Virus record (IMG/VR): IMGVR_UViG_3300050821_013430
Location: 248,001 to 312,000 of that record
Direction: 5' to 3' (one strand)
DNA length: 64,000 nt
Shown: positions 11,904-57,986 of the stretch, piece after piece
How positions within the stretch are numbered: position 1 is the first letter of the stretch
How the letters are laid out: every line of letters starts with the position of its first letter
Notes under the pieces: model-generated
What the model was told of the DNA's origin: nothing
Databases searched by the model: none
The model's input: the letters and a program-made list of their open reading frames with translations, nothing else
Program-made: the position numbers and the translations under genes

Positions 11904-12100
11904 CGGTGATCCAATCCGCATTGTTGACAGCAGCCAGAAAGACCTGAGCCGTTGCAAACGGGACAAGTTCGGGCTCCGACATTCTCAGGTTCGTTGTAAT
12001 CGAGATATTGCTCCTGACCTTCACCACCACAATTGGAACAGGCGCCAGGCGGAAAAATGGTCTCGCTCTTTTCGATCAATTTCCAATCGAAGTCTCTCAA
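11900..12100 (-). CDS. CPQCG-tag family variant (DnaJ-like CxxCxGxG body)
   Basis: CSNCGGEG...CPVCNGSG...CQQCGLDHR*; probable TTG start overlapping the upstream stop. Confidence 0.6.
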   Translation of the reverse strand: MRDFDWKLIEKSETIFPPGACSNCGGEGQEQYLDYNEPENVGARTCPVCNGSGLSGCCQQCGLDHR

Positions 12101-12300
12101 TGGGTTTCTCCGCATTGAGGACATCGTTCTACTACGACAAAGCGTAATTGGCTATAACTGCCTGGCAGCCCACTGATCTTGTAGTCGGGGTTGTGCACTT
12201 CTGCGTCATACACCTGTCCCAAAACCAGTTGCATCTCCTTATCGAAGTATTCCGGCGAGGCATTGAACCTGTTGGAGACATCAATGCACTTGACTTTCAT
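12097..12300 (-). CDS. CPQCG-tag family, MKVKCID type
   Basis: MKVKCID...LGQVY...RFVVVERCPQCGETH*. Confidence 0.8.
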   Translation of the reverse strand: MKVKCIDVSNRFNASPEYFDKEMQLVLGQVYDAEVHNPDYKISGLPGSYSQLRFVVVERCPQCGETH

Positions 12301-12482
12301 GGATGTATCTCTCCACATTGGGAACAAGCATTACTCGGCACAATTTGGAAGCGGTGCTTGAACCACCACCCAGCACCTTTCAAATGATAACCATCACCGT
12401 ATTCAGAAATCACTTCATAAACCCTGCCTTCAAATAATGGCATACGAATACAATCACACCCTTCTACACACTTGACTTTCAT
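12297..12482 (-). CDS. CPQCG-tag family, MKVKCID type
   Basis: MKVKCVE...GRVYEV...WFKHRFQIVPSNACSQCGEIHP*. Confidence 0.8.
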   Translation of the reverse strand: MKVKCVEGCDCIRMPLFEGRVYEVISEYGDGYHLKGAGWWFKHRFQIVPSNACSQCGEIHP

Positions 12483-12697
12483 TAGTGAGTTTCTCCGCAT
12501 TGAGGACAACGCTCGCCCTCTTTGACTATCACGAAACGGTTGCTACGCCACCAATCAGACAAACCTATTAGGTGGTACATCGTCATATTGAGGGTGGAAG
12601 AGTGGTATGCGCTAAGCACTTCATACTCTTTGTCTATTACGAGATCGCTTTTCTGATCCAGATCGCCCGGAGCAGCATCTATACATCTAACTCTCAT
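12482..12697 (-). CDS. CPQCG-tag family, MKVKCID type
   Basis: MRVRCID...KEYEV...RFVIVKEGERCPQCGETH*. Confidence 0.8.
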   Translation of the reverse strand: MRVRCIDAAPGDLDQKSDLVIDKEYEVLSAYHSSTLNMTMYHLIGLSDWWRSNRFVIVKEGERCPQCGETH

Positions 12698-12966
12698 TGA
12701 TGTACCTCTCCACATTGATGGCAACGAGACTTCTTCGCGAAGGCTTCCAATTCGGCAATGATGCCTTTATTGAACCACCAACGAGGTAATTGGTTATCAT
12801 CCCTAACTATATCCAAAGCGCCCCACGCACGGGTGGCGAAGTCCTGATGCCATTGTGCTAAGGTAGAGAAACACTTAGCACACCAGAGATACCAGTCTTC
12901 ACTGGTGTAGTTTTTGGTTCCGGGCATTGATATGCCGCAACACTTGCAATTAGCCATCTTTTCCAT
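12694..12966 (-). CDS. CPQCG-tag family, CxxC-CxxC type
   Basis: CKCC...CAKC...CHQCGEVHQ*. Confidence 0.8.
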   Translation of the reverse strand: MEKMANCKCCGISMPGTKNYTSEDWYLWCAKCFSTLAQWHQDFATRAWGALDIVRDDNQLPRWWFNKGIIAELEAFAKKSRCHQCGEVHQ

Positions 12967-13002
12967 CTACAATCACACCTATGGGTTATTTCGCATCCTG
13001 AT

Positions 13003-13563
13003 ATGTCCGCCAAGTTATCCAAACTAAGCCGGAAACTGCTCCTAAAATGGGCGATGAAACTCAACATCTCCGACGCCCCCTACTATTCACCAGTCCCAAA
13101 GGGAGAGGAATGGGGGAAGTTGGAAACCGGCTCAGATCCTCTTTTACCAGTCGCGCCTTCTACCGCGCCATCCCTTTTAGACCTGTTGAAATCGAAGGCT
13201 ACCCAGATATACACGGAGGGCAATACCCTTCGGATCTACTTGGAAGCCGCGGGCGGAGAAGATGACCACGGCCCGCAACGGCAAACCCCATCTAAACGCC
13301 ACCTACTGATGAAAGAGGCAGCCAGAGAGGTCGTTAGAGCCATTACTGAGGTGGCCGATATTCTCAATGCGATAAGGAAAGGCGATCATTCCGTTGATGA
13401 TCTGGCTGCGAAAGCCAAAAGCCTTTGGAAACTGACCCAAACGCTAATGGCCAAAGAGTATTCCTTAGAGATGGAAGAGTTGGAACGGTTTCATCTCTAT
13501 CTTGAACAGTTCCTTGGACTATTGAGTAGTATCGTTGAATATGAGGATTACAAGGAGTTCTAA
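13003..13563 (+). CDS. hypothetical protein with N-terminal amphipathic helix
   Basis: ORF; GCAT-N6-ATG upstream, no SD. Confidence 0.7.
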   Translation: MSAKLSKLSRKLLLKWAMKLNISDAPYYSPVPKGEEWGKLETGSDPLLPVAPSTAPSLLDLLKSKATQIYTEGNTLRIYLEAAGGEDDHGPQRQTPSKRHLLMKEAAREVVRAITEVADILNAIRKGDHSVDDLAAKAKSLWKLTQTLMAKEYSLEMEELERFHLYLEQFLGLLSSIVEYEDYKEF

Positions 13564-13733
13564 TCCTTGATCTTGCCATCTTTGCCCAAAACGATAGGCT
13601 TCTTTTTTCCGTTGCGATCTACCTCGACCAATATCGGTAAGAGGACGGTATAGGCATTACCATCTTCATCCTTATAGGTTGAGTAGATGCGATTATCGCT
13701 GTAAAAGTGCCTTACTAATTCAGCCCTCTTCAT
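13560..13733 (-). CDS. small hypothetical protein (57 aa)
   Basis: Manual translation MKRAELVRHFYSDNRIY...; abuts upstream stop. Confidence 0.55.
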   Translation of the reverse strand: MKRAELVRHFYSDNRIYSTYKDEDGNAYTVLLPILVEVDRNGKKKPIVLGKDGKIKD

Positions 13734-14015
13734 TTAGCCTAACCGATAGGAAGATACCTTGCCACGCTCAATAAAGAGATTGACCCGCCCCGTCTTGATA
13801 TCATCGGTTAGTAATCGAGTGTCCCCATCTTCTTGGGCAAGACGCCATTCACGTTTGTTGGTTTCTAAGGTGGTGATGGCCGCTTCCTTGGTCATTCCGA
13901 CGATGGAAGTGAGTTGGAATCCCTTGACCGAAACCGTATCAGGCTCCACATCTCGTATCTCGGTATGAATTTCAGAGAGTTGTTCGGGAGTAATCTTCTT
14001 GTCAGTAGTATCCAT
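13734..14015 (-). CDS. possible I78/potato-inhibitor-like protease inhibitor
   Basis: IVGMTKEAA...WRL...DG...[19 protein letters not shown]...LG resembles the T-x-D-x-R-x-x-R-x-N pattern. Confidence 0.5.
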
Positions 14016-14076
14016 TTTGTCTTCTTTCTTATTATTTTATTTGAAATGTCAAATAACTTCCGATATATATGTATAT

Positions 14077-19285: not shown

Positions 19286-19334
19286 ACAAGTCTGCTAATT
19301 TATTGGCAGATTGCAAGTCATTTCGGAAGTAAGA

Positions 19335-19604
19335 TCAGTGTTTTTCTCCGCACTGAGGGCAATTTTCTTCGGCTATCAGTTTTTTGAGGGCCTCATAGAA
19401 CTCATCGCCATCTTCGAGAACGAAAGAGTAGAGAGACTGCGTTTTGAGATCGTTCCATAGGCTGCCCCCAACGACTTCACGGACTCGATAAGCACACGGC
19501 CCACATACCACGCCAATGAACGATTTTGGATCGAAGACAAGTCTATAATGGTAAGACCATCCCTCGGTCAGTAGTTTGCGACAAAGAGGACACTTATAGT
19601 CCAT
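19335..19604 (-). CDS. CPQCG-tag family, CxxC-CxxC type
   Basis: MDYKCPLC...CGPC...CPQCGEKH*. Confidence 0.8.
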   Translation of the reverse strand: MDYKCPLCRKLLTEGWSYHYRLVFDPKSFIGVVCGPCAYRVREVVGGSLWNDLKTQSLYSFVLEDGDEFYEALKKLIAEENCPQCGEKH

Positions 19605-19848
19605 GTCGTTCTCCGCACTGAGGACAATATCCGAGTTTGATCCTGGCCTTGTATAAGGCACTAACGAAACTTGGGCTTCCCCCATCCACACAGAAAGTCC
19701 ATCCTGCTTCCGTACCCGCATACCACTCAGCATGGAACGGCTCTCCCTTTTCCCGATACACCAATTCAGCGCAGGACAGGCATGTAATCCCAATATTAGC
19801 ACCTATTTCCCTGGGTATTGAACATTGACACAAGAAACACTTAGACAT
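19594..19848 (-). CDS. CPQCG-tag family, CxxC-CxxC type
   Basis: CFLC...CLSC...CPQCGERHGL*. Confidence 0.8.
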   Translation of the reverse strand: MSKCFLCQCSIPREIGANIGITCLSCAELVYREKGEPFHAEWYAGTEAGWTFCVDGGSPSFVSALYKARIKLGYCPQCGERHGL

Positions 19849-20029
19849 GCACTTCTCCGCATTGAGGGCAAGGCTCTTCCACTACCTCAAAGCGAGTTTT
19901 GGCCCAGCACAATCGCTTATTCTCGACCAATTCATAGTGGTTTTTGTGCTCTACTGCGACCGTATAAACTACGGTCATACCGAGAGTGCCGTGGCCAAAC
20001 CCACGATCATTGATGCATCTTACCTTCAT
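19841..20029 (-). CDS. CPQCG-tag family, MKVKCID type
   Basis: MKVRCIN...RFEVVEEPCPQCGEVHV*. Confidence 0.8.
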   Translation of the reverse strand: MKVRCINDRGFGHGTLGMTVVYTVAVEHKNHYELVENKRLCWAKTRFEVVEEPCPQCGEVHV

Positions 20030-20286
20030 AGGTGTTTCTTTCCGCACTGAGGACAATTGCCGTTCTTTCTGCTTTGCAGAATATCCAACACCGCCTTATC
20101 CAAAGGCGAGTCGCCGTTATAGCCAGTTGCTCCGTATTGTCGATACATTCCCGGTAGTCCTAATTTACTTACTGCTTGAACAGCAGGATGTTGATAGGCA
20201 ATTTCAGCACAAGGAATGCAAAGAAACTTAGAACAGCCACTAAGCGCCGTATGTACTTCGATTCTGCATATCTCGCAGTTATTCAT
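20026..20286 (-). CDS. CPQCG-tag family, CxxC-CxxC type
   Basis: CEIC...CIPC...CPQCGKKHL*. Confidence 0.8.
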   Translation of the reverse strand: MNNCEICRIEVHTALSGCSKFLCIPCAEIAYQHPAVQAVSKLGLPGMYRQYGATGYNGDSPLDKAVLDILQSRKNGNCPQCGKKHL

Positions 20287-20473
20287 GTCGCTCTCCACAT
20301 TGGGGACAACCATTCTCTGGCACCTCTACAAAACGCCACTTGAAAAAGACCCAATGCGGATTTCCTAACTCATAGCAATCAGATCGGCTATAATTGGAGC
20401 GAGTTCGATATACCTGGCCCAAAACAAGCCATCCACTGATATCGCCGCTTACATCAATGCACTTGACTCTCAT
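20279..20473 (-). CDS. CPQCG-tag family, MKVKCID type
   Basis: MRVKCID...LGQVY...RFVEVPENGCPQCGERHE*. Confidence 0.8.
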   Translation of the reverse strand: MRVKCIDVSGDISGWLVLGQVYRTRSNYSRSDCYELGNPHWVFFKWRFVEVPENGCPQCGERHE

Positions 20474-20730
20474 TGATGCTTTTCTCCACACTGCGGGCAG
20501 TACAATTCCGCTCGGGCTTTGAGAATGGCTTTTTGGGTAGCCAGATGCCTACCATCTTTCTTTTCCTTCCCATAGCAGATAAATCCCGAACAAGAGCAGG
20601 TGTATTGGGCACCATAGTCTTGCTCTAACATCTTAGCGCAAGGATCGCATAGGTATCCAATACCAGCCCAACCATGCTTGTCAATTAGGCAACTACAAAG
20701 ATCACAGCGTTTTTCCAGATTAGGCATCAT
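20470..20730 (-). CDS. CPQCG-tag family, CxxC-CxxC type
   Basis: CDLC...CDPC...CPQCGEKHQ*. Confidence 0.8.
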   Translation of the reverse strand: MMPNLEKRCDLCSCLIDKHGWAGIGYLCDPCAKMLEQDYGAQYTCSCSGFICYGKEKKDGRHLATQKAILKARAELYCPQCGEKHQ

Positions 20731-20742
20731 TCATCTCCTACA

Positions 20743-20778
20743 CAAAGACAAAAGGCCCAGACCTTTCGATCTGGGCCT
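20743..20778 (-). terminator. Rho-independent terminator
   Basis: AGGCCCAGA/TCTGGGCCT stem followed by TTTTGTCTTTG on minus strand. Confidence 0.75.
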
Positions 20779-30412: not shown

Positions 30413-30562
30413 TTATTGAACGGCGAAGCCCTTCCTTCGGCTCGGTCTATTGTTGAGCAGATATTGAGTCCAACACTTAGGGCATCCGTCTACGAAAGTA
30501 CGCGTGGGCACCGGCAGGCGCTTGGCTCTGTATTTCGGATGGGTTTTACACTTGGCTTTCAT
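30413..30562 (-). CDS. small hypothetical protein (49 aa)
   Basis: MKAKCKTHPKY...GCPKCW; SD lies inside the upstream tag. Confidence 0.5.
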   Translation of the reverse strand: MKAKCKTHPKYRAKRLPVPTRTFVDGCPKCWTQYLLNNRPSRRKGFAVQ

Positions 30563-30833
30563 ATCGATGATCCTTTCCACATTGGGGGCAGAGCCCCAGT
30601 CTTACGCCTTGTTTCAGTTTCGATACCGCATCTCCAATCCCAGATGGGCCTGTACCATCTAACTTGATAGGGCGATAATCCACTCGGCCACGACCCCGAT
30701 CTTCGGTTAGTATCCGATAGTCCTTCATGTACTGAAAGACCATCGTCTCAGCACAAGGAATGCAGATGACGTGAGTATAGGGATCGCACGGCGGGATGGG
30801 AATGTTGATGCCACAGACTTCGCAACTATGCAT
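30546..30833 (-). CDS. CPQCG-tag family, CxxC-CxxC type
   Basis: MHSCEVC...CIPC...CPQCGKDH. Confidence 0.8.
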   Translation of the reverse strand: MHSCEVCGINIPIPPCDPYTHVICIPCAETMVFQYMKDYRILTEDRGRGRVDYRPIKLDGTGPSGIGDAVSKLKQGVRLGLCPQCGKDHRYESQV

Positions 30834-31098
30834 GTACGCCTCCACATTGAGGACATTTACCTTGCCTTCTTTCGGCGAGCACTTTGTTCACCATGTCTGC
30901 AAACCGGGTGGGACGTTGATCGGCATAAGTGAAGCGGTAATCAAACCTTCCTCGTTGATAGTCAACGGATTCGATTGGCAGATGTTGTATCTTGAAACGG
31001 ACAAGCACTTCCTCAGTACAAGGAATGCAAACGACATGCGTTCTTGGTGCCACGGGAGGGATAGCGATAGAGGCAGAACATAACTGGCAACTATGCAT
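30826..31098 (-). CDS. CPQCG-tag family, CxxC-CxxC type
   Basis: MHSCQLC...CIPC...CPQCGGVHA*. Confidence 0.8.
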   Translation of the reverse strand: MHSCQLCSASIAIPPVAPRTHVVCIPCTEEVLVRFKIQHLPIESVDYQRGRFDYRFTYADQRPTRFADMVNKVLAERRQGKCPQCGGVHA

Positions 31099-31360
31099 GT
31101 TTGTTCCCACACTGAGGGCAGTGTCCGGCAAGTCTTCGTTCCAACAACTCTATCACTGCCTTATCCATCTGAGAGGTAAGAGAGTAGAGTAGTCTACCTT
31201 TTTTCCTATCACCATTAGACACTTCCCATTTGGGGTTCAGATGACGCATTGCGATCTCGCCACAAGGAATGCAGACATTCCCAATCGATCCGGTGAGGTA
31301 ATCAATGTTAGGCATCACTACATCACACAACGAACATCTATTCAACGAACATCTACTCAT
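31091..31360 (-). CDS. CPQCG-tag family, CxxC-CxxC type
   Basis: CSLC...CIPC...CPQCGNKHA*. Confidence 0.78.
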   Translation of the reverse strand: MSRCSLNRCSLCDVVMPNIDYLTGSIGNVCIPCGEIAMRHLNPKWEVSNGDRKKGRLLYSLTSQMDKAVIELLERRLAGHCPQCGNKHA

Positions 31361-31386
31361 GGGTACCTCTACATTACTGACTTGTT

Positions 31387-31641
31387 TCACCGATGAATCC
31401 CTCCGCACTGAGGACAGAACGCCTCACTTCTTAGTTCTGGGTGAGCCATTAGGATATCGTTCATCTTGGACTTGATCATGAATGGAAACTTGCCTTCGTC
31501 CTCGTTCCGGCGCACCCAAGGCGAATCCCAATTCAATCCTCCAACTTGGAAGAGACGATTGGCGCAAGGAATGCACAACACCAAGTCATACCCGGGCCAC
31601 GTCGAAATTGGAATGGCACACATGGCACAATTGTTCGTCAT
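31387..31641 (-). CDS. CPQCG-tag family, CxxC-CxxC type
   Basis: CAMC...CIPC...CPQCGGIHR*. Confidence 0.8.
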   Translation of the reverse strand: MTNNCAMCAIPISTWPGYDLVLCIPCANRLFQVGGLNWDSPWVRRNEDEGKFPFMIKSKMNDILMAHPELRSEAFCPQCGGIHR

Positions 31642-33496: not shown

Positions 33497-33775
33497 TCAA
33501 TGCGTGGATAGGCATTGGAGGCAGAAATCGGGATTGACGGTTTTAGCCTGCTCCCATATGCTCTCCCAGCGTCCGTAGTGCTCGCACACATTGGTGAAGT
33601 AGTTGCTGCTATTATGACTCCCGCCACCATCGTCTGCGATATTCGCCTTACGATGGCAGATCAAGCACCGCACAGGCACCTTGATCAAAACGCACCTGGT
33701 GTCGCGAGAATAGCCCTCTCGTCCCGCACTTCTGATCACATCCTCGCCAAGCCAAAAGTCTTGCGTTTCCATCAT
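33497..33775 (-). CDS. CPQCG-tag family, METQ type (degenerate tag CLQCLSTH)
   Basis: METQDF...PVRCLIC...CEHY...FCLQCLSTH*. Confidence 0.75.
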   Translation of the reverse strand: MMETQDFWLGEDVIRSAGREGYSRDTRCVLIKVPVRCLICHRKANIADDGGGSHNSSNYFTNVCEHYGRWESIWEQAKTVNPDFCLQCLSTH

Positions 33776-39362: not shown

Positions 39363-39563
39363 CTATTTAGAGCGCTTCTTACGAGGCTTGATCTCTTTGA
39401 CCTGACACCCAAGTTCTTCGAGAGGAGCGACCAGACTGATCTGCATCTTCTCCAACTTCTCCTTGTGTTTGTTGAGAGAACGGACTGCACCCTCTTCGGA
39501 CTTGGCGTTGCAGGTGTAGGTGAGTTTGACAACTGCGTGATAGGAGGCTTTGTATCGCTTCAT
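39363..39563 (-). CDS. hypothetical protein
   Basis: ATGA-coupled to tagged ORF. Confidence 0.6.
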   Translation of the reverse strand: MKRYKASYHAVVKLTYTCNAKSEEGAVRSLNKHKEKLEKMQISLVAPLEELGCQVKEIKPRKKRSK

Positions 39564-39805
39564 TGATGATACCGTTTGCATTGATGGCATCGTTGAGGAA
39601 CGGAGATGCCAAGTTGTTCGATATACTCTGTCCAAACCCTGATGGTAAAGGCATTGCCTCCGGATTGCTGGTAGATCCCCGCTGAAACGGGGTAATTGGC
39701 CTCTGCCGCGAGTTTCGCAGAACAGGATGGACAGGCTGCCATTTGATCGGCGTGCATTGCGAATGACAGTTTGACCTCGGCAGTTTGGCAGATGAAGCAC
39801 TTCAT
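39560..39805 (-). CDS. CPQCG-tag family, CxxC-CxxC type
   Basis: CFIC...CPSC...CHQCKRYHQ*. Confidence 0.75.
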   Translation of the reverse strand: MKCFICQTAEVKLSFAMHADQMAACPSCSAKLAAEANYPVSAGIYQQSGGNAFTIRVWTEYIEQLGISVPQRCHQCKRYHQ

Positions 39806-40650
39806 TGGCTACTCACCTGGCAACATCTCCCGTCTGTGAAGTTATGATACCCAGCCCCATGGTTTTTGGTGATGGGGCGACAGCGATGTCTGCCACCAAA
39901 CATTGTTCCCCCTTTCAATCCTGAGCGAAGCATCAAACCAGGAACGGAAGAATGCGCATACTGCGGAACTTCAATCCAATCATCAGTATCTCCCACCATC
40001 TGATGAACATGGTATTGCAGACTGGTGCATCCAGGAAACTCCGTAATGTTGGCGCGGTAATCACATGCCTTGTTTCCGCACATAATCGGTTGGCGCTCAG
40101 TATTACAGGTGGTATTGCTAAACTCAAAACCGCTGCCGTAAGGATAAGGTGCCATATCCTCCCCCTCGCAGGCCATATTCCATTGATCCTCGTCGCATAA
40201 CTTCGCGCCACGATCCGTACACATCTTTTGCGCCTCACCCCAGGTTAGATCATACGGCATCCCCATCTCATCATGCAGTTCTTCCCGATCGATGCAGTAA
40301 TCCATATGCACACGCTGCTTGGATAGACATACAGATGGCTGTTGGTATCGTTTGCATCGAGCCCAAGGCTTATCAGCCTCTTCCTTAGACATCCATTCGA
40401 GACACTTCTGTTCGACTTTGGGGCAGTAATCGCCCACCACATGCACCATTCCATTAGGGCAATAAGTAGGCTCGGGAACAACGGTAAAAGTACCCTCTAT
40501 CTTCACTGAGTTAGCAGGAGGTGGAGGATTAGGGCAACCGTTAGGATAGCAGACATTGTGTAGATTATTGGGAGGTGGTGTGGTTTGCTGCACCGTATGC
40601 TGACAAGCCATTACACTCAGACAGATGATTGATGGAATCATGATGCGCAT
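39802..40650 (-). CDS. lipoprotein with FGE-sulfatase (SUMF1/EgtB/PvdO-like) domain
   Basis: VMAC lipobox; YCIDREE, TWGEAQKMC...KLCDEDQWNMACEG...YPYG, HQMVGD..DW, GRCC; AAGGAG SD. Confidence 0.78.
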   Translation of the reverse strand: MRIMIPSIICLSVMACQHTVQQTTPPPNNLHNVCYPNGCPNPPPPANSVKIEGTFTVVPEPTYCPNGMVHVVGDYCPKVEQKCLEWMSKEEADKPWARCKRYQQPSVCLSKQRVHMDYCIDREELHDEMGMPYDLTWGEAQKMCTDRGAKLCDEDQWNMACEGEDMAPYPYGSGFEFSNTTCNTERQPIMCGNKACDYRANITEFPGCTSLQYHVHQMVGDTDDWIEVPQYAHSSVPGLMLRSGLKGGTMFGGRHRCRPITKNHGAGYHNFTDGRCCQVSSQ

Positions 40651-40664
40651 GATGATACTCCTTG

Positions 40665-41033
40665 CTACTGAGAATGAACGAGACCACATTGAGAACAGGC
40701 GTTTTCTTCAACCACTACAAAACGATCTTGAAACCAAGGGTTGCCGGATACTTCTGCCAACACGTACCCGCATTGCGGACACGCTCCATAGTAGTCGATA
40801 GTGTTTCGCACCGCCCTCTCATGAGCATAATGACCTTTCAGCATCTCGATCCTTTTCCCGTTCTTGACGAACTCTTTCCAGGAGTCGCCAGGGAATAGGT
40901 CTTGTCTCAACGCAGTGGTGCGGTCATAGATGCCCTTGGCGCAGGAGCAACAAAACTCGTACCAGCCAGGACTAAACTCTTTGTCTTCGCAAGAAGAGTA
41001 CTGGCCGCACATGTCGCACTTGAACTTGATCAT
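40665..41033 (-). CDS. CPQCG-tag family, fused double-tag unit
   Basis: CDMC...CCSC...CPQCG-YVLAEVSGNPWFQDRFVVVEENA-CSQCGLVH. Confidence 0.78.
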   Translation of the reverse strand: MIKFKCDMCGQYSSCEDKEFSPGWYEFCCSCAKGIYDRTTALRQDLFPGDSWKEFVKNGKRIEMLKGHYAHERAVRNTIDYYGACPQCGYVLAEVSGNPWFQDRFVVVEENACSQCGLVHSQ

Positions 41034-41040
41034 CGATATC

Positions 41041-41340
41041 TCACGAAGGGTAAGGAGTGGGCGTAATGTCGTGTACAAACCCACACTGACCGCAGGTAGT
41101 CCAGTGAGACTTGACTTGCTCGACCGCAGCGGCAAAGTGCGGATTGCTTCTGCTGTAAAAGAAGCCCCTTTTGTCCGCTTCTGTATGCGCTATCCGTTTA
41201 TGCCAGCCATACTCTGATCGGTCTGCATAGAAGCCCGGCGCATGGAGGAAGACCTCCCTCGCACAAACGGGACACAAGTGCCAGTAGGCATCATATTGCT
41301 TGCCAATCACCCCGACGCCACATAGATCGCACTTGTTCAT
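41041..41340 (-). CDS. CPQCG-tag family, CxxC-CxxC type
   Basis: CDLC...CPVC...CGQCGFVH. Confidence 0.78.
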   Translation of the reverse strand: MNKCDLCGVGVIGKQYDAYWHLCPVCAREVFLHAPGFYADRSEYGWHKRIAHTEADKRGFFYSRSNPHFAAAVEQVKSHWTTCGQCGFVHDITPTPYPS

Positions 41341-44416: not shown

Positions 44417-44590
44417 TCAACGACCACAATGATATCCACACCCACACTTTCCGTTGCGACAATAGACCTTCTCGGCCCAAAAGTGCCAAGACCGCGGGTG
44501 CTTACACTCCGTACAGACCTCTCCTTTCGAGAAGCCAAAGCGCCACCATAACCACCAAGCATAGTGTTGCAAGTCGCGATACCAGTTCAA
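44417..44590 (-). CDS. small Cys-rich protein
   Basis: CTECKHPRSWH...C..GKCGC; probable TTG start inside upstream tag stop. Confidence 0.5.
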   Translation of the reverse strand: MNWYRDLQHYAWWLWWRFGFSKGEVCTECKHPRSWHFWAEKVYCRNGKCGCGYHCGR

Positions 44591-44850
44591 TGCACATCCC
44601 CACACTGAGTGCAGCGACTACTAATTGCTTCCTTCACTCTTCCTTCGTTCCAATTATCCCACCCCGTATATCCATGTTCCAAATTGGTATCATCAATTGA
44701 TGGTATCCATAGGCTATGACCAGCCTTGCTTATGGCCTGCTTGTAGATAAGGCAGCAGGCTTTACACATCACAATGTGCTTGCTGGTGGTATAATGCCCT
44801 GGCCTACATATCACGCTCTGCTTACAATGCAGGCACTTATGCTCGTTCAT
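44587..44850 (-). CDS. CPQCG-tag family, CxxC-CxxC type
   Basis: CLHC...CKAC...CTQCGDVH*. Confidence 0.78.
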   Translation of the reverse strand: MNEHKCLHCKQSVICRPGHYTTSKHIVMCKACCLIYKQAISKAGHSLWIPSIDDTNLEHGYTGWDNWNEGRVKEAISSRCTQCGDVH

Positions 44851-45038
44851 TTCTTCCCACCTTCCAAAGTCTTCTCCAACTTGTTGCACCCCTGCCGTAT
44901 CATCAGCAGTTGCTCTCGGATAGTCTTGTCGTCTGACTTATTGAGCAGGGTAGAAGAGGTCATCTCCAATACTCGTTTCAGGTCGATCAACATCTTGCCC
45001 TTCTCGGTCAGTCCGTACTCTTTCTCTTCGACTTCCAT
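44847..45038 (-). CDS. hypothetical protein
   Basis: Coupled ORF. Confidence 0.6.
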   Translation of the reverse strand: MEVEEKEYGLTEKGKMLIDLKRVLEMTSSTLLNKSDDKTIREQLLMIRQGCNKLEKTLEGGKK

Positions 45039-45039
45039 C

Positions 45040-45285
45040 TTAGTGCCTCTTTCTGCATTGGGGACAGATCTCAGCCAGAATCTTGTCTACTTGATCACTG
45101 AAACAACCACCGGAGCGCACGAATGTGAACCAATCTTGGGTAAGTATACTCGCATATCCTATCCCGTGCTTATCGTCTAACCCTTTATAGACTTCCACTG
45201 CACAGGCAGGGCAAACAACACCTGTCGTTGATTGGTTTGCGGGCGGGTGTACGAGTTTTAGACACATCTCACACGACTTTTCCAT
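45040..45285 (-). CDS. CPQCG-tag family, CxxC-CxxC type
   Basis: MEKSCEMC...CPAC...CPQCRKRH*. Confidence 0.8.
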   Translation of the reverse strand: MEKSCEMCLKLVHPPANQSTTGVVCPACAVEVYKGLDDKHGIGYASILTQDWFTFVRSGGCFSDQVDKILAEICPQCRKRH

Positions 45286-45287
45286 TG

Positions 45288-45536
45288 TCAGTGTACCTTT
45301 CGACATTGAGGACAAGTCTTCCCAATCATCCTGTCTACCTGGCCAGCAAACTTCGGGGAGCTATTACTGAACGACCACCAATTACCCTCTGATTCGTGCT
45401 GAGCGTCCGAGGCACCTTCTTCGTCTCCTATCTCACGATAGACTTCCGCCGCACAATCAATGCAGAGCATACGATGCTTCATTTGGTTGGCGGACGGATG
45501 GACTATTCTCAAACAGAGTTCGCACGGCTTTTCCAT
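45288..45536 (-). CDS. CPQCG-tag family, CxxC-CxxC type
   Basis: MEKPCELC...CIDC...CPQCRKVH*. Confidence 0.8.
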   Translation of the reverse strand: MEKPCELCLRIVHPSANQMKHRMLCIDCAAEVYREIGDEEGASDAQHESEGNWWSFSNSSPKFAGQVDRMIGKTCPQCRKVH

Positions 45537-45545
45537 CTCTTCACC

Positions 45546-45746
45546 TCAGTGTTGAATGCCACATTGCGGACAGGAGCCGGGCGCAAGCACTGTAAAGTGC
45601 CAGGCATAGTACCACGCTAATAGGCCCAGGTTATTGATCAGTTGATAATCACCCACATTGTCGGGGTTCGATACCGTATAGACCTTCCCCACGGTCAACT
45701 TGTTCTCATCTACACCAGTGGTGTTGATGCACTTGACTTGCTTCAT
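45546..45746 (-). CDS. CPQCG-tag family, MKVKCID type
   Basis: QVKCIN...LTVGKVYTV...CPQCGIQH*. Confidence 0.8.
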   Translation of the reverse strand: MKQVKCINTTGVDENKLTVGKVYTVSNPDNVGDYQLINNLGLLAWYYAWHFTVLAPGSCPQCGIQH

Positions 45747-45759
45747 TCAGTCTCTCTTC

Positions 45760-46017
45760 TTAGTGTTTCAGACCACACTGCGGACAATGGCCACGCTTGA
45801 TGCGTAGTATTTCCAGCCCTTCGGCAATGTTCTTGCTAGTCTTGTCGAAGTCCCACCATCCCTCAGTGTCTCTCTCGGCACGGTCTCGTCTTTCGCGATC
45901 CCCCACTTCCACATAGGCATCTACGGCGCAAGTAGTACACACCACTCGTCGTGTAAGAACTTCCACGCGCGAAGGACATTCCAATACCTTCGAACACAAT
46001 TCACAGTGTCTTGTCAT
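45760..46017 (-). CDS. CPQCG-tag family, CxxC-CxxC type
   Basis: CELC...CTTC...CPQCGLKH*. Confidence 0.8.
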   Translation of the reverse strand: MTRHCELCSKVLECPSRVEVLTRRVVCTTCAVDAYVEVGDRERRDRAERDTEGWWDFDKTSKNIAEGLEILRIKRGHCPQCGLKH

Positions 46018-49841: not shown

Positions 49842-50010
49842 CGATCATCTCACGAAGGTGCTTCTTGGTTTGGTGCAATTCGCAGCCGCTGGTATGGCAG
49901 AACTTGTTGATGTCATAGCACACCGGGCAATGCTCGTAGTAGACAAACTCAAAGCGATCAAGGAAGGTCAGTGCAGAGGTAAGCGTTTGTTGGGTAGTAG
50001 GGGTGTTCAT
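49828..50010 (-). CDS. small zinc-binding protein
   Basis: CPVC...HTSGCEL. Confidence 0.55.
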   Translation of the reverse strand: MNTPTTQQTLTSALTFLDRFEFVYYEHCPVCYDINKFCHTSGCELHQTKKHLREMIDERN

Positions 50011-50231
50011 TGATGGACTTTCCGGCATTGAGGGCAGACTTTGAGTAGGTCATCGCGGAAGGACTCGGGCCAAAGATCATAGTCCATACCGCTTCGCCAG
50101 AGGCGATTACCCTTAGACGCATAGTAGGCCTTGGCACAAGGAGTGCATACGTAAACTCTGGCTTCCAAAGGTACATCGTAGGAAAGCCAGATCTCGGCAT
50201 GACAGATCAGGCATTGAGTAATGCAACTCAT
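50007..50231 (-). CDS. CPQCG-tag family, CxxC-CxxC type
   Basis: CLIC...CTPC...CPQCRKVHQ*. Confidence 0.8.
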   Translation of the reverse strand: MSCITQCLICHAEIWLSYDVPLEARVYVCTPCAKAYYASKGNRLWRSGMDYDLWPESFRDDLLKVCPQCRKVHQ

Positions 50232-50455
50232 TGATGAAACCCTTTGCATTGTGGGCAGTGGGCCTGAACGAGACGATCGTGCTGTTCACTGCGCTTTCCG
50301 ATCAGTCCGTAAGGAATGACACAATCCTTCACAACGGAGACTCGGCCTATGATCTTCCCAGCCTTTCCAGCGCAGGCAAGACACAAGTAGGTAGCATTAC
50401 CCGCACCACCACGAGTGCTGTCAATGAGGGCTTGGCAAAAGAAACAGTTGATCAT
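50228..50455 (-). CDS. CPQCG-tag family, CxxC-CxxC type
   Basis: CFFC...CLAC...CPQCKGFHQ*. Confidence 0.8.
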   Translation of the reverse strand: MINCFFCQALIDSTRGGAGNATYLCLACAGKAGKIIGRVSVVKDCVIPYGLIGKRSEQHDRLVQAHCPQCKGFHQ

Positions 50456-51618: not shown

Positions 51619-51831
51619 TTAGTGAAACCTTCCGCATTGAGGACAGGTATGCCCTTTCAGGTTGTTATGGAACGGCCAGTCCTTATGGTAAGCGACCGAA
51701 CCGTAGTCAATAACCAGACCTAAACGAGCCATGACCTTGGCACAATCCAAACACGCGTGTAGAAACTCGGGTTTGGTGTATTCAGTAGGTGTCAATCCAA
51801 CGCCGCAAGTATGACAGGTGTGAGTATGCAT
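51619..51831 (-). CDS. CPQCG-tag family, CxxC-CxxC type
   Basis: CHTC...CLDC...CPQCGRFH*. Confidence 0.8.
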   Translation of the reverse strand: MHTHTCHTCGVGLTPTEYTKPEFLHACLDCAKVMARLGLVIDYGSVAYHKDWPFHNNLKGHTCPQCGRFH

Positions 51832-52082
51832 TTAGACCTCATGAATATGCAGGCATTGGGGGCAGGCGTGGCTCTTATGCTGCTCTAAGAGAGGCCAATG
51901 TCGCCAAACTCGTTCTTCAACGGATACATCTCAAAACGAGTATCCTTATGCAGGTTGGTGTAGTAGTCCCAACCGTTCTTGCGCTCTAACATGAGGACAT
52001 CGTGGTAGATGCCATCATCGCTGGGGGCGATCCAAAGTCGTAGGGGGCCATAGCAATGATCAACGCCGGATACTATCGACAT
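51832..52082 (-). pseudogene. probable frameshifted tag-family unit
   Basis: ORF 51885..52082 stops 5' of an out-of-frame CPQCLHIHEV* tag at 51832..51864. Confidence 0.45.
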
Positions 52083-52624
52083 GCCTGCTCCTTGCAAAGG
52101 AAAGTGATGTCATCTTCATAGAGGTGAAAGTCCGTTTCAACTTCATGCCTGATGGCTTCGTTCATTATAGCCGGGTGTTCAATACTGAGATCAGGTAAGT
52201 TCATGACATGGCCAAACTCATGCGAAGCGAACACTCTCAACTCCGACATTCTACTCACTCGATCTTCCATTAGCCAGATCGTATTGGTCGCAGGCTCATG
52301 CAATCCCATCGTCCAGAGCCCCGGATGATCATAGGTGCTCGTGATCCATCGTCTCTTCTCCCCAAACGGTATCTTGACTTGAATGGCATTGGGCTCGCAA
52401 CGCTCGACAAACCTTGCCTCAGGCGCCCTATAATCCCATATGGCCGCGCCCTCTCTAATCATCTGCTTCTCTTGATCGGAGAAACCATCGCTGATGCAAT
52501 ATGATCGCTGCACGAAGGCAGGGCGTTCAACGCTGCGATGTAGGAAGGTAAGTGTCCAAACCAGAATGACAGCAATCAGAGCGAAGCGTAAGCCTAAGGA
52601 AAGCCAGATGGACTTGAAGGTCAT
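52073..52624 (-). CDS. matrixin-like zinc metalloprotease with N-terminal anchor
   Basis: HEFGHVMNLPD...AIMN; start coupled to upstream tag. Confidence 0.72.
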   Translation of the reverse strand: MTFKSIWLSLGLRFALIAVILVWTLTFLHRSVERPAFVQRSYCISDGFSDQEKQMIREGAAIWDYRAPEARFVERCEPNAIQVKIPFGEKRRWITSTYDHPGLWTMGLHEPATNTIWLMEDRVSRMSELRVFASHEFGHVMNLPDLSIEHPAIMNEAIRHEVETDFHLYEDDITFLCKEQACR

Positions 52625-52854
52625 TGGTGTATCTCTCCACATTGAGGACAAGGGGGATGCAATCGCATCTCCTCGATGAGAGCGTTCCACTTGTATTGAG
52701 GGGACAGAGAGAAACGACAAGGGTTGGTTTCCAAACCCCCGTCATGACGCTTCCATAATCGACCAGAGCACCTGCCGCAACACAATACCATCTCATCAGA
52801 AGGGCCAAGGCCATACGATACGCTGGCTGAACACACATAGCACGGATTGATCAT
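52621..52854 (-). CDS. CPQCG-tag family, CxxC-CxxC type
   Basis: CYVC...CCGRC...CPQCGEIHQ*. Confidence 0.8.
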   Translation of the reverse strand: MINPCYVCSASVSYGLGPSDEMVLCCGRCSGRLWKRHDGGLETNPCRFSLSPQYKWNALIEEMRLHPPCPQCGEIHQ

Positions 52855-54836: not shown

Positions 54837-55136
54837 TCAGTCCCATTCTAAGACCATCTTGTTCCGTGTTTCCATATGTGCTTCCCTCGGAAGCGGCTCA
54901 GCGGTCATTGTTCGCCGTAGTATTCGATCCCTTACTCCGTGCTTGTTCTTCCCGATCGGGAGGGTCAATCGCACCTTGTTGAAGCAGACCTCATCGATCT
55001 CGATCTTGACCCCCATCTCTTCCAGGTCGGAGAGGTATTGGACTGCGTGAAGATCATCGACGAAACTGACACCACCGAAGGCGTTATGTCCTTCTTCTTG
55101 TCGGAGGTCAAACTCTTTGCGCCAGTTCTTTCTCAT
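54837..55136 (-). CDS. hypothetical protein, paralog of previous
   Basis: MRKNWRKEF...; start coupled to tag. Confidence 0.7.
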   Translation of the reverse strand: MRKNWRKEFDLRQEEGHNAFGGVSFVDDLHAVQYLSDLEEMGVKIEIDEVCFNKVRLTLPIGKNKHGVRDRILRRTMTAEPLPREAHMETRNKMVLEWD

Positions 55137-55405
55137 GGATGCCTCTGATAGCATTGAGGGCAGATATCGCAGATGACAGCCACCTTCCTCGCGGCCGAAG
55201 CATACTTGCCTCCCTCCGCCTCGAAAGGCCAATGAGTGAAACCCTCATCGCGTATAAGGCTATCATCAACGGAAGTCCATATGTCCTTCAATGAGCCTTT
55301 GAGGGACGAACAGCACTCTGAACACAAGATGACAGAAGGAAGATACACCTGAGCAAAGCCTCTGGCATCGAAGGATTTTCCGCAACGGCAACAACACCAG
55401 TTCAT
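55133..55405 (-). CDS. CPQCG-tag family, CxxC-CxxC type
   Basis: CCRC...CSEC...CPQCYQRHP*. Confidence 0.8.
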   Translation of the reverse strand: MNWCCCRCGKSFDARGFAQVYLPSVILCSECCSSLKGSLKDIWTSVDDSLIRDEGFTHWPFEAEGGKYASAARKVAVICDICPQCYQRHP

Positions 55406-55665
55406 GGATGAATCCTTTCGCATTGAGGACACAAGGGATACTTGGGTGTGATGGCGTCAATGAAGAGTCGGTTTTCCGACCACCAAGTATAACCGCACTG
55501 CTCGATCATAAGTTGGCATCCGTACGTCCAAAGTCCATTCACGCTAAGAAGCGTCTTCATGTTCTCTAAGCAGCAGTCTCGACACCAACTAACACGATCG
55601 AAACCGATCTCCCTTGTACCGTTTGTCCTTATCTCTTTGCCACAGTGAGCGCAAGGGAAGATCAT
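55402..55665 (-). CDS. CPQCG-tag family, CxxC-CxxC type
   Basis: CAHC...WCRDC...CPQCERIHP*. Confidence 0.8.
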   Translation of the reverse strand: MIFPCAHCGKEIRTNGTREIGFDRVSWCRDCCLENMKTLLSVNGLWTYGCQLMIEQCGYTWWSENRLFIDAITPKYPLCPQCERIHP

Positions 55666-55943
55666 CCGTGAACTCTCCTACACTGCGGACAAACCGAAGG
55701 CAAGGGAAGAAGCGCTTCCGCTCGCTTGGCTCGATCGGTCATATTGGGACGATCCAAGATCCAACGAGTGTATGGCTGATAGTCCAGCATGTGTTGATCG
55801 TCCTCTCCCCAGATCCCATTATCGACCAGCAGTTGTTTATCGATCATGCAACACTCTTTGCACCAGAAGACGTTCAGGTCGGTATAAGCGTATTCAACGG
55901 TCGTGATGAGTCGACCGCAGTGATGGCACCAGATCTGCTGCAT
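55662..55943 (-). CDS. CPQCG-tag family, CxxC-CxxC type
   Basis: CHHC...WCKEC...CPQCRRVHG*. Confidence 0.8.
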   Translation of the reverse strand: MQQIWCHHCGRLITTVEYAYTDLNVFWCKECCMIDKQLLVDNGIWGEDDQHMLDYQPYTRWILDRPNMTDRAKRAEALLPLPSVCPQCRRVHG

Positions 55944-56224
55944 TAGTGCTTCTTTCGGCATTGGGGGCACACGCCTTCAACAGGCATGATAGCGGCCACC
56001 TTGGCTGCTTGCTCCGCAAACACCACCCAACGCTCTAACGGCCAATGCGTATAGCCGTACTTTTCGAGTAGGCCTCGATCTTGGCCATCTATATTCACCT
56101 TCGAGGAGAGCAGGGCTGCATAGTCGGTGCAGCACTTCTTGCACCAAACGATAGTGGGCCCATAGTCTTCCAGATGCCCCTGCGAATCGATCGGGGCCGC
56201 ACAGTGATTACACGAGTACTCCAT
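55943..56224 (-). CDS. CPQCG-tag family, CxxC-CxxC type
   Basis: CNHC...WCKKC...CPQCRKKH*. Confidence 0.8.
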   Translation of the reverse strand: MEYSCNHCAAPIDSQGHLEDYGPTIVWCKKCCTDYAALLSSKVNIDGQDRGLLEKYGYTHWPLERWVVFAEQAAKVAAIMPVEGVCPQCRKKH

Positions 56225-56284
56225 ATCAGTTCTCCTTCTGTGTCTTGGTAAGCGTTGCAAACTTCATGGACAGGGCGTTCTGCT

Positions 56285-56680: not shown

Positions 56681-56690
56681 GGAAAACTCC

Positions 56691-56945
56691 TTAGGGATGA
56701 ATCTTGTCGCATTGCGAACAACGAACGACTTTGGGGATGGCGCGAATGCGCTGCTTCATCTCGGCATTCACGATGCTGCTGAGGCTTGCAATTTCCTCGC
56801 AGCCCTCAACGGTGCATGGTGGCGTGAAACCAACCTCTTTCAACAGGTCAATGCCTTCGCGATGATAACAGTCAGCACACCAGAAGAGTGCGGTAGGAGC
56901 GTTATTACTCGATCGCAGAAACCTACCACAGTGATCGCAATCCAT
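56691..56945 (-). CDS. CPQCG-tag family, CxxC-CxxC type
   Basis: CDHC...WCADC...CSQCDKIHP*. Confidence 0.78.
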   Translation of the reverse strand: MDCDHCGRFLRSSNNAPTALFWCADCYHREGIDLLKEVGFTPPCTVEGCEEIASLSSIVNAEMKQRIRAIPKVVRCSQCDKIHP

Positions 56946-56947
56946 CT

Positions 56948-57223
56948 TCAACCTCCAAACGAAACCAACCAAGCCCAACTCAGATCCGCATTCAGCGGAT
57001 ACATCTCGTTCCTACCAGATAACTGGCGGGCGTCCCAGTATCGTCCCTTGTCGTCCAACCACCAGTTTTTCAGGGTGGGGAGATCGCAAGGACGCAGGAC
57101 GCTCATCGAGAAGTCTCCCCGAAACTCGGAGAGCATGACGATCCGACAGTCGGGATGGATCAGATCAGCAGAAGGAATGGGTGCCGGGCGCCATACCAAT
57201 TCGGATAGTGAGCGAATGATCAT
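56948..57223 (-). CDS. hypothetical protein (untagged)
   Basis: MIIRSL...EMYPLN; EMYPL shared with 51885..52082. Confidence 0.6.
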   Translation of the reverse strand: MIIRSLSELVWRPAPIPSADLIHPDCRIVMLSEFRGDFSMSVLRPCDLPTLKNWWLDDKGRYWDARQLSGRNEMYPLNADLSWAWLVSFGG

Positions 57224-57462
57224 GGATGGAGGTTTCCGCATTGGGGACAGATATGCTTGGCTTTATGCGCATTCAACTGCTCTGTCCATCCATCGAAACC
57301 CATCGCAAGACTGCCCTTCAACTCCTCGATATAACTCACGCTAAACTGATAGAGCCTTTGCAGTTCGGTCGCGCAAGAGAAGCAAACGATCTGATAGGAA
57401 GGACTATAAGCCCTGACGGGGCTGCACTTTTTACCACAGCAGTAGCAATCGAACATGATCAT
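57220..57462 (-). CDS. CPQCG-tag family, CxxC-CxxC type
   Basis: CYCC...CFSC...CPQCGNLHP*. Confidence 0.8.
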   Translation of the reverse strand: MIMFDCYCCGKKCSPVRAYSPSYQIVCFSCATELQRLYQFSVSYIEELKGSLAMGFDGWTEQLNAHKAKHICPQCGNLHP

Positions 57463-57468
57463 CTCCGT

Positions 57469-57705
57469 TCAGTGTTTGAGACCACACTGGGGGCATCGTG
57501 CAAGGACGTCCAGTTGGGACTCCCAGTATGTAGACCACGCCACTCCGTCGTGTTGCTTGTAGAAGATGGGGTAATCTCGCTCCCAATCGCAGCCGATGTA
57601 GTCGTAGACACGCTTGGAACAAGCGAGACAGGCTATCTTGGGCGAATACGAGGAAAGGCCATAGGGCTTATGACAAGTCGTTCCACAGAATATGCACTTA
57701 TGCAT
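57469..57705 (-). CDS. CPQCG-tag family, CxxC-CxxC type
   Basis: CIFC...CLAC...CPQCGLKH*. Confidence 0.8.
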   Translation of the reverse strand: MHKCIFCGTTCHKPYGLSSYSPKIACLACSKRVYDYIGCDWERDYPIFYKQHDGVAWSTYWESQLDVLARCPQCGLKH

Positions 57706-57949
57706 GTAGATCTCCACATTGAGGGCAATGGCCCATCCTGACTTTGACTACCGAGACAGCAAGATCCAATCTGTCCGCGCTCCCAATACTACTTTCCCAT
57801 GTCCATCCGTTTTTGATTCCCCAATCAAGGGGAGGGAATCGACCACAATACTCTTTGTACACCGGCTGCAAACACTTGGCACAAAGGATCTTCTCACAAG
57901 CCGATAGGCTCCTGTCAATGAAGACCTTGCAGATCATGCAATTAGCCAT
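57698..57949 (-). CDS. CPQCG-tag family, CxxC-CxxC type
   Basis: CMIC...CAKC...CPQCGDLHA*. Confidence 0.8.
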   Translation of the reverse strand: MANCMICKVFIDRSLSACEKILCAKCLQPVYKEYCGRFPPLDWGIKNGWTWESSIGSADRLDLAVSVVKVRMGHCPQCGDLHA

Positions 57950-57986
57950 GATGTAGCCCTCCACATTGGGGACAGCGGATGATCAA
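57942..57986 (-). other. 'empty' tag-only mini-ORF (14 codons, TTG start)
   Basis: TTG ATC ATC CGC TGT CCC CAA TGT GGA GGG CTA CAT CAT GGC TAA = (M)IIRCPQCGGLHHG*. Confidence 0.6.

What the first reader, a model, noticed from the sequence alone, without database searches (positions are those of the whole stretch)
12097..57986. The tag's DNA doubles as the Shine-Dalgarno and start site of the next gene
Seen: the Gly-Glu/Lys codons of the tag usually form an SD 5-9 nt before the next start. Examples (minus strand): 12482 TGC GGAGAAACTCAC TAATG; 12694 GGAGAGGTACATCA ATGA; 19841 GGAGAAGTGC ATG; 30826 GGAGGCGTAC ATG; 34059 TAAGGAGCATCAG TAATG; 52621 GGAGAGATACACCA ATGA; 57942 GGAGGGCTACATC ATG. 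Gly is very often GGA. Where Gly is replaced, a purine run is often kept (55662 AGGAGA, 55133 AGAGG, 55402 AAGGA). The His codon often supplies the next start: CAT-G gives ATG at 19594, 19841, 20279, 30826, 31091 and 57698; CAT-TGA gives TTG at 12097, 44587 and 57983. Inference: each unit carries its own translational plug, so any gene landing downstream of a tag is translated at once. That would make the arrays self-extending.
Basis: partly seen in the sequence, partly recalled or inferred. Interest (0 to 1): 0.78.

Follow-up and report, generated by a model that had tools for sequence, protein, structure and literature searches.

The report
Zinc-finger tag doubles as ribosome-binding site
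In this uncultivated 473-kb soil phage, the last codons of about 45 small zinc-finger genes really do spell the ribosome-binding site of the next gene, but every other tightly packed gene here does the same, so this is ordinary translational coupling seen very clearly, not a special self-spreading device.

Summary
The window holds 45 minus-strand C-terminal tags, C-P-Q-C-[G]-x-x-H followed by 0-6 residues and a stop. In 34 of them the next gene starts within 5 nt of the stop: ATGA, TAATG, or CATG taken from the His codon.

- **Codon bias.** Tag Gly is GGA in 21 of 31 cases against 22.5% in gene bodies (p=1e-7). Cys, Gln and His codons in the same tags sit at background.
- **Position dependence.** Where the Gly codon lies 10-14 nt before the next start, GGA is 44/52. 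Elsewhere it is 13/38 (p=1.6e-6). This holds separately in the window, in the rest of the genome and in independent metagenomic relatives.
- **Recoding test.** Synonymous recoding weakens anti-SD pairing (z=-4.9).

- Non-tag coupled junctions have equally strong SDs (-5.4 vs -5.6 kcal/mol) and the same recoding signal (z=-4.2).
- They also show the same GGA bias and K/E/G enrichment, and the same spacing.
- Tags whose neighbour has its own spacer SD use GGT or GGC and rarely have Glu.
- The paralogs are old (median 23% identity).

The SD is therefore a junction-by-junction adaptation written into the free positions of a zinc knuckle. It is not a portable plug. This is a known mechanism and a tidy natural experiment.

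The parts
2241..2770 (-). Two tagged genes (2244-2510, 2510-2770) whose tags carry long tails after His
   Evidence: Tag Gly is GGT in both. The SD for the next ATGA start sits in the tail instead (AAAGGAGAG at 2507, -8.7 kcal/mol; AAAGGT at 2241)..
5217..5818 (-). Two tagged genes (5220-5615, 5615-5818), both with ATGA junctions
   Evidence: GGAAAGGAT (5612) and AGGAAAGAG (5217) give -5.4 and -4.3 kcal/mol..
7077..7152 (-). Phage tRNA-Gly, anticodon UCC, which reads GGA and GGG
   Evidence: ARAGORN and Rfam tRNA at 54 bits. It decodes the codon that the SD constraint favours. Any link is inference only.
11900..12966 (-). Five-gene tagged array, with tags ending at 12694, 12482, 12297, 12097 and 11900
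   Evidence: Four tags have GGA GAR 11-14 nt before the next start (ATGA, TAATG, ATGA, TTGA), at -6.4 to -7.7 kcal/mol. The last tag (G-L, 11900) gives only -4.1 before the RNase HII gene..
19335..20730 (-). Six-gene tagged array, with tags ending at 20470, 20279, 20026, 19841, 19594 and 19335
   Evidence: All six Gly codons are GGA. Junctions alternate between ATGA and CATG (-8 or -11). The tag at 19335 keeps GGA GAA although the next start is 49 nt away, which is a counter-example. A hairpin plus T-run at 20781-20750 precedes the array..
30546..31641 (-). Four-gene tagged array, with tags ending at 31387, 31091, 30826 and 30546
   Evidence: GGAGGC at 30826 gives -9.3 kcal/mol through a CATG start. 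GGGAAC at 31091 is weak (-4.2). The start after 31387 is ambiguous (GTG at -4 or ATG at +26)..
33497..34355 (-). Three tandem tagged paralogs, with tags ending at 34059, 33772 and 33497
   Evidence: Here the SD is AAGGAG, made from the Lys-Glu codons at x6-x7 (-8.4 and -8.0 kcal/mol), and Gly is GGT or GGG. The tag at 33497 (L-S-T) gives no SD before the exonuclease gene..
39560..41135 (-). Two isolated tagged genes (39563-39805, 40668-41135)
   Evidence: The tag at 40665 has GGT and the next gene has its own spacer SD, AAGGAG. The tag at 39560 (K-R) has no SD and no coupled neighbour under the start rule used..
44587..46017 (-). Array of five tagged genes, with tags ending at 45760, 45546, 45288, 45040 and 44587
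   Evidence: Tags at 45760 and 45546 have GGT and GGC, with SDs in 9-13 nt spacers. R-K tags at 45288 and 45040 give AAAGG and AAGAGG. The tag at 44587 has GGGGAT before a possible TTG..
50007..50455 (-). Two tagged genes with K-G and R-K tags and ATGA junctions
   Evidence: AAAGGG gives -4.5 and CGGAAAG gives -3.5 kcal/mol. These are weak SDs..
51619..51864 (-). Tagged gene 51622-51831, plus the tag ending at 51832
   Evidence: At 51832 the tail codons GAG GTC supply GAGG 5 nt before the ATG. At 51619, GGA AGG lies 26 nt from the next start, which uses a spacer AAGGA..
52621..52854 (-). Single tagged gene followed by a non-family 183-aa gene
   Evidence: GGA GAG ... CAATGA, -6.4 kcal/mol. The tag SD serves an unrelated neighbour..
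55133..56260 (-). Four-gene array in which tag position 5 is not Gly (R-K, R-R, E-R, Y-Q)
   Evidence: Purine runs are kept: AGGAGA -7.3, AAAGGA -5.4, AGAGG -5.8 kcal/mol. The tag at 55943 (CGA AAG AAG) gives only -1.0..
56691..57705 (-). Three tagged genes, with tags ending at 57469, 57220 and 56691
   Evidence: The tag at 57469 has GGT and the tag at 56691 has D-K. In both cases the next gene has GGAG in its own spacer. The tag at 57220 has GGA AAC, weak at -3.5..
57698..58270 (-). Two tagged genes separated by a bare-tag mini-ORF (57945-57986, 13 codons)
   Evidence: The tag at 57983 (GGAGAA) runs through TTGA into the mini-ORF. The mini-ORF's GGAGGG (-9.8, the strongest in the window) and CATG start the gene 57701-57949, whose own tag GGAGAT and CATG start the next gene..
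58464..58718 (-). Tagged gene with a K-C tag
   Evidence: An ATGA junction with no SD (-0.9 kcal/mol) before a membrane-protein-like ORF..

Best explanation
This is ordinary translational coupling in tightly packed, polycistronic phage gene arrays. The window is part of a 472,749-bp uncultivated soil phage contig. That contig carries at least 90 very divergent paralogs of a small, uncharacterised Cys-rich protein (most likely zinc-binding) ending in a CPxCG...H knuckle.

Each gene stops within a few nucleotides of the next start, so the SD of the next gene has to be written inside the last 3-5 codons of the upstream gene. In the tag, Gly is mostly kept, its third base is free, and residues x6-x7 are variable. 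Selection for 16S pairing therefore picks GGA for Gly and often GAR (Glu), AAG or AGG next to it. It also picks NNA-TGA or CAT-G to build the start.

Shown here: the sequence signals, their position dependence and their generality across the window. Inferred: ribosomes terminating on the tag re-initiate, or 30S subunits bind de novo, at that SD.
For: - **Packing.** 34 of 44 tag junctions have the next start within +5 nt of the stop.
- **Codon bias.** GGA is 21/31 in tags against 22.5% in bodies and 12/46 in body Gly-Glu dicodons. Cys, Gln and His codons in the same tags are at background.
- **Position dependence.** GGA is 44/52 when Gly lies 10-14 nt before the next start and 13/38 otherwise (Fisher 1.6e-6). 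It is significant in each of three sets: window 16/19 vs 5/12; rest of the genome 14/18 vs 6/19; independent relatives 14/15 vs 2/7.
- **Recoding null.** Tag junctions z=-4.9, non-tag junctions z=-4.2.
- **Generality.** Non-tag coupled junctions average -5.39 against -5.55 kcal/mol for tags. In non-tag genes, Gly 7-15 nt before a coupled start is GGA in 11/20 against 170/769 in bodies (p=0.0016), and K, E and G are enriched 2.6x, 2.1x and 1.8x there. Median aligned spacing is 6 nt in all classes.
[quoted passage not shown] The dual role constrains end-of-gene codon usage (PMC8410138, citing Eyre-Walker 1996). NNA-UGA bias comes from overlapping starts (PMC7246954).
Against: There are no expression data. 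No RNA run was listed, so coupling itself is not shown.

Starts were assigned by a rule, not measured. An in-frame ATG inside the tag (CAATG) is an alternative start at every d=14 junction, and public gene calls sometimes use it.

The host and its anti-SD are unknown. A canonical 16S tail was assumed.

Some tags keep GGA GAA without a coupled neighbour (19335). GGA in out-of-register tags is 34%, slightly but not significantly above background (p=0.12).

Paralogs are not phylogenetically independent, although the Cys, Gln and His codons in the tags are at background usage.
Confidence: 0.85

Rival explanations
1. The tag is a self-contained, portable translational plug: any gene landing behind it is expressed at once, and this drives self-extension of the arrays.
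For: Tag SDs serve non-family neighbours at 52621 and, weakly, at 11900. A bare-tag mini-ORF at 57945-57986 supplies the strongest SD in the window. Tagged genes are more often tightly coupled than other genes, 34/44 against 60/106 (p=0.025). The closest paralogs are neighbours, which indicates tandem duplication.
Against: SD strength, spacing, codon bias and amino-acid bias are the same at non-tag junctions. GGA and Glu drop out when the next start is out of register. Identity is at most 53% and median 23%, so there is no recent growth. Tandem duplication of any whole gene in such an operon recreates its junction without a special plug.
Confidence: 0.08
2. The GGAGA bias is inherited DNA identity from recent duplication or gene conversion among tags, not selection for an SD.
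For: The tags form a repeated motif, and tandem paralogs exist.
Against: Cys (23/22 and 22/23), Gln and His codons inside the same tags are at background usage. The bias depends on register with the next start in three separate data sets.
Confidence: 0.03
3. The downstream genes really start at the in-tag ATG (CAATG). The Gly third base is then constrained by the overlapping frame, because GGT followed by GA would create TGA in that frame.
For: The in-tag ATG is in frame with the downstream ORF at all d=14 junctions. Some public gene calls start there (P0001). CAA is commoner than CAG in in-register tags across all sets, 51/19 against 22/31.
Against: This would forbid only GGT, yet GGC is also almost absent (1/52 against 35% background). 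No SD lies upstream of the in-tag ATG. Family N-termini align from the stop-overlapping ATG. d=10 (CATG) junctions are not in that frame but show the same GGA bias. The window alone shows no CAA effect.
Confidence: 0.04

Closest known systems
Intragenic Shine-Dalgarno motifs at overlapping gene pairs, with termination-reinitiation coupling (Huber et al. 2019, PMC6728339)
   Same: ATGA and TGATG-type overlaps. [quoted passage not shown]
   Different: Here dozens of junctions fall in one paralogous C-terminal motif, so the same residues can be compared in and out of register. Coupling is not measured.
End-of-gene codon-usage distortion caused by the neighbouring gene's signals (Eyre-Walker 1996, as cited in PMC8410138; NNA-UGA bias in PMC7246954)
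   Same: Synonymous choice (GGA, and a last codon ending in A before TGA) is explained by the next gene's SD and start.
   Different: The effect also reaches the amino-acid level in a conserved motif. Glu at x6 is 30/52 in register against 5/38 out of register. Part of that sample was ascertained with a Gly-Glu pattern.
CPxCG zinc-knuckle, zinc-ribbon and rubredoxin-like small proteins
   Same: Paired CxxC motifs and a C-terminal C-P-x-C-G. Sub-threshold hits to several zinc-ribbon Pfam and NCBIfam models.
   Different: No model reaches its cut-off. A confident AF2 model (pLDDT 89.5) has no Foldseek neighbour in PDB or the AFDB clusters. The invariant His four residues after the knuckle and the strictly C-terminal position are family-specific.

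Membership tests
Translationally coupled gene pairs with an intragenic SD | Co-directional genes with a stop/start overlap or a gap of a few nucleotides | tested here: met
   34/44 tag junctions have the next start within +5 nt of the stop: -4 x21, -8 x6, -1 x3, -11 x1.
Translationally coupled gene pairs with an intragenic SD | Anti-SD complementarity 5-10 nt upstream of the downstream start, inside the upstream ORF | tested here: met
   Mean -5.55 kcal/mol. 71% are at or below -4.4. A core of at least 4 nt is present in 25/34, with median spacing 6 nt.
Translationally coupled gene pairs with an intragenic SD | Synonymous choice shaped by the SD | tested here: met
   Recoding null z=-4.9. GGA is 44/52 in register against 13/38 out of register.
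Translationally coupled gene pairs with an intragenic SD | Downstream translation depends on upstream translation and on the SD | not testable with these tools
   The phage is uncultivated and no RNA run was listed. Reporter assays are needed.
   Out-of-register tags use GGT, GGC or GGG in 25/38 cases and have Glu in only 5/38.
   Non-tag junctions are equal in energy, spacing, codon bias and residue bias.
   Maximum identity 53%, median 23%.
Zinc-ribbon / rubredoxin-knuckle proteins | A match to a curated family model above its cut-off | tested here: not met
   Pfam, PHROGs, NCBIfam and PDB profile searches gave only sub-threshold hits.
Zinc-ribbon / rubredoxin-knuckle proteins | Conserved metal-ligand pattern | tested here: met
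   Invariant C4, C7, C23, C26, C75, C78 and H82 in 28 paralogs. Metal binding itself was not tested.

The most novel reading that the evidence does not exclude
The demand for an SD has shaped not only codons but also the protein sequence of a conserved zinc-knuckle tag (Glu or Lys at x6) across more than 120 paralogs. The resulting tag-plus-overlapping-start junction makes whole-gene tandem duplicates immediately expressible, which would help this family expand to about 100 copies in a 473-kb phage. The phage's own tRNA-Gly(UCC) may be kept to serve the GGA load this creates.
Probability: 0.12. Interest if true: 0.5.

Novelty: new member of a known kind. Interest (0 to 1): 0.25.

Why it matters
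The mechanism is textbook, so the finding does not change how phage gene expression is understood. Its value is as a clean natural experiment. One short motif is repeated about 120 times, both in and out of register with a downstream start. That shows directly that SD selection fixes a synonymous site (GGA) and biases a neighbouring residue (Glu).

It also has a practical use. Gene callers mis-start many of these ORFs at an in-tag ATG, and the SD register tells annotators which start to prefer.

The protein family itself is large, unannotated, confidently folded and without structural neighbours. It is probably the more interesting object.

Tried and rejected
- **Public phage records.** Megablast of 19300-21300, and tblastn of a 424-aa ORF and of a tagged protein, gave no match. 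Only a DUF7275 protein found distant phage homologues, at 42% identity.
- **The search for related loci** with the family alignment failed because no stretch was conserved enough.
- **Second IMG/VR pattern scan.** It returned mostly out-of-frame chance matches in unrelated phages. These were discarded. Only pieces of the same genome were kept.
- **Near-identical strain L005** (99.0% identity). None of its 44 substitutions falls in a tag, so the comparison is uninformative.
- **RNA evidence.** No run was listed.
- **Junction RNA structure.** Tag junctions are only marginally more structured than shuffles (mean z -0.38, p=0.08).
- **Family annotation.** Atlas, PDB sequence, Foldseek PDB and AFDB searches gave nothing significant.
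- **CATG overlaps.** An excess of CATG (-8) overlaps after tags was tested and is not significant.
Full report
**What the window is.** It is densely packed with small minus-strand ORFs. It belongs to IMGVR_UViG_3300050821_013430, a 472,749-bp uncultivated viral contig. The same contig was assembled almost identically from other soil metagenomes. Nothing in deposited phage records is close to it.

**The tag.** Forty-five minus-strand ORF ends read C-x-x-C-x-x-x-H (once C) followed by 0-6 residues and a stop. Most read C-P-Q-C-G-x-x-H.
- The proteins are 60-100 aa and come in two body types. One has CxxC...CxxC near the N-terminus. The other starts MKVKC.
- Across 28 members only C4, C7, C23, C26, C75, Q77, C78 and H82 are invariant, with mean identity about 25%.
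- No Pfam, PHROGs, NCBIfam or PDB family is matched above threshold.
- An AF2 model is confident (pLDDT 89.5) but has no Foldseek neighbour.
- A profile search of 1.8 billion representatives finds about 80 further small proteins with the same strictly C-terminal tag.

**Checking the observation.**
- In 34 of 44 junctions the next start lies within +5 nt of the stop: ATGA x21, CATG-type -8 or -11 x7, TAATG x3.
- Tag Gly is GGA 21, GGT 6, GGG 3 and GGC 1. GGA is 22.5% of 996 Gly codons in gene bodies and 12/46 of body Gly-Glu dicodons. The binomial p is 1e-7.
- Inside the same tags the Cys (23/22 and 22/23), Gln and His codons are at background. Pro CCT is mildly high, 18/35 (p=0.016). The tags are therefore not recent DNA copies, and the Gly bias is site-specific.
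- Mean anti-SD duplex energy upstream of tag-coupled starts is -5.55 kcal/mol, against -2.5 for random intragenic 20-mers.
- Recoding the upstream codons synonymously with window-wide usage gives -3.91. None of 2000 recodings was as strong as the real sequence (z=-4.9).

**Register test.** I classed each Gly tag by the distance from its Gly codon to the next start.

| Data set | GGA, 10-14 nt before next start | GGA, other distances | p | Source |
|---|---|---|---|---|
| Window | 16/19 (the rest GGG) | 5/12 (6 GGT, 1 GGC) | 0.021 | |
| 47 further tags, same genome outside the window | 14/18 | 6/19 | 0.008 | |
| 31 tags, divergent relatives on independent metagenome contigs (under 80% or no nucleotide similarity) | 14/15 | 2/7 | 0.004 | |
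| Pooled | 44/52 | 13/38 | 1.6e-6 | |

- The search patterns used to fetch these loci left the Gly codon free.
- The out-of-register tags are the ones whose neighbour has its own SD. It lies in a spacer (57469, 45760, 45546, 40665), in a long tail after His (2507, 2241), or in the Lys-Glu codons one step later (34059).
- Glu at x6 follows the same rule, 30/52 against 5/38 (p=2e-5). That sample is partly ascertained with a Gly-Glu pattern, and the window alone gives p=0.16.

**Is the tag special?** It is not.
- The 60 non-tag coupled junctions have mean energy -5.39 kcal/mol (MWU p=0.89 against tags).
- Their recoding z is -4.2 and their median aligned spacing is the same 6 nt.
- In non-tag genes, Gly codons 7-15 nt before a coupled start are GGA in 11/20, against 170/769 in bodies (p=0.0016). 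K, E and G are enriched 2.6x, 2.1x and 1.8x in that zone.
- The CATG (-8) arrangement is not significantly commoner after tags, 7/34 against 6/60.

**Self-extension.** The closest paralogs are neighbours, so arrays grew by tandem duplication. Identity is at most 53% and median 23%, so no recent growth is visible. Duplicating any whole gene in such an operon recreates its junction, so no special plug is needed.

**Mechanism.**
- Shown: the sequence signals, their register dependence and their generality.
[quoted passage not shown] This dual role distorts end-of-gene codon usage (PMC8410138, citing Eyre-Walker 1996). NNA-UGA bias comes from overlapping starts (PMC7246954).
- Inferred: ribosomes finishing the tag reinitiate, or 30S subunits bind, at the tag-encoded SD. 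Gly is mostly kept at position 5 of the tag (consistent with a structural role in a CPxCG knuckle, from general knowledge, not tested here), its third base is free, and x6-x7 are variable. That is where selection writes the SD.

**Caveats.**
- Starts were assigned by a rule: the first ATG from 14 nt before the upstream stop.
- An in-frame ATG inside the tag (CAATG) is an untested alternative start.
- The host 16S is unknown.
- There are no expression data.
- Paralogs are not fully independent.

**Verdict.** The plug and self-extension reading is not. This is a known mechanism in a new, unusually clear setting.

Noticed in passing
window 7077-7152 (-) and 27261-27342 (-): The phage encodes tRNA-Gly(UCC), which reads GGA/GGG, the codon favoured at SD-positioned Gly. 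It also encodes tRNA-Leu(CAA), which reads UUG. A link to the GGA load is speculation.
   Followed up: partly
window 57945-57986 (-): A 13-codon mini-ORF consists of little more than a tag (M-I-I-R-CPQCGGLHHG). It sits between two tagged genes, is entered through TTGA, and supplies the strongest SD in the window. It is probably the remnant of a deleted family member.
   Followed up: partly
all d=14 tag junctions, e.g. window 12482-12510, 55943-55970: The Gln-Cys codons CAA-TG create an ATG that is in frame with the downstream gene. The ORF listing and some public gene calls (P0001, P0010) start there, adding 6 or more residues. CAA against CAG is 51/19 in in-register tags and 22/31 otherwise across all sets (p=0.0009), but the window alone shows no difference. 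This is unexplained.
   Followed up: partly
tag position 2, window-wide: Pro is CCT in 18/35 tags against 31% background (p=0.016). Tag junction RNA is slightly more structured than shuffles (z -0.38), while non-tag junctions are at +0.26. A possible CCUC/GAGG pairing that masks the SD was not tested.
   Followed up: no
window 20750-20781 (-): A strong 14-bp hairpin followed by a T-run lies directly upstream of the six-gene array 20730-19335. It could be a terminator or an operon boundary.
   Followed up: no
tagged protein family, e.g. window 19597-19848 (-): The family is large: at least 90 copies in this genome and about 80 further cluster representatives in metagenomes. It is unannotated. 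Its AF2 model is confident (pLDDT 89.5, pTM 0.79) but has no significant match in PDB or the AFDB clusters.
   Followed up: partly
L001 893-2137 (same contig, just beyond the high end of the window): An OrfB_IS605 / Cas12f-like TnpB gene sits on the opposite strand among the small-gene arrays.
   Followed up: no
window 16766-17881, 46265-47260, 28272-29246 (-): Unusual cargo for a phage: a Phi_1 (phosphate-induced protein 1) domain protein and an alliinase/aminotransferase-like protein. There is also a GIY-YIG/NUMOD3 homing-endonuclease-like gene.
   Followed up: no
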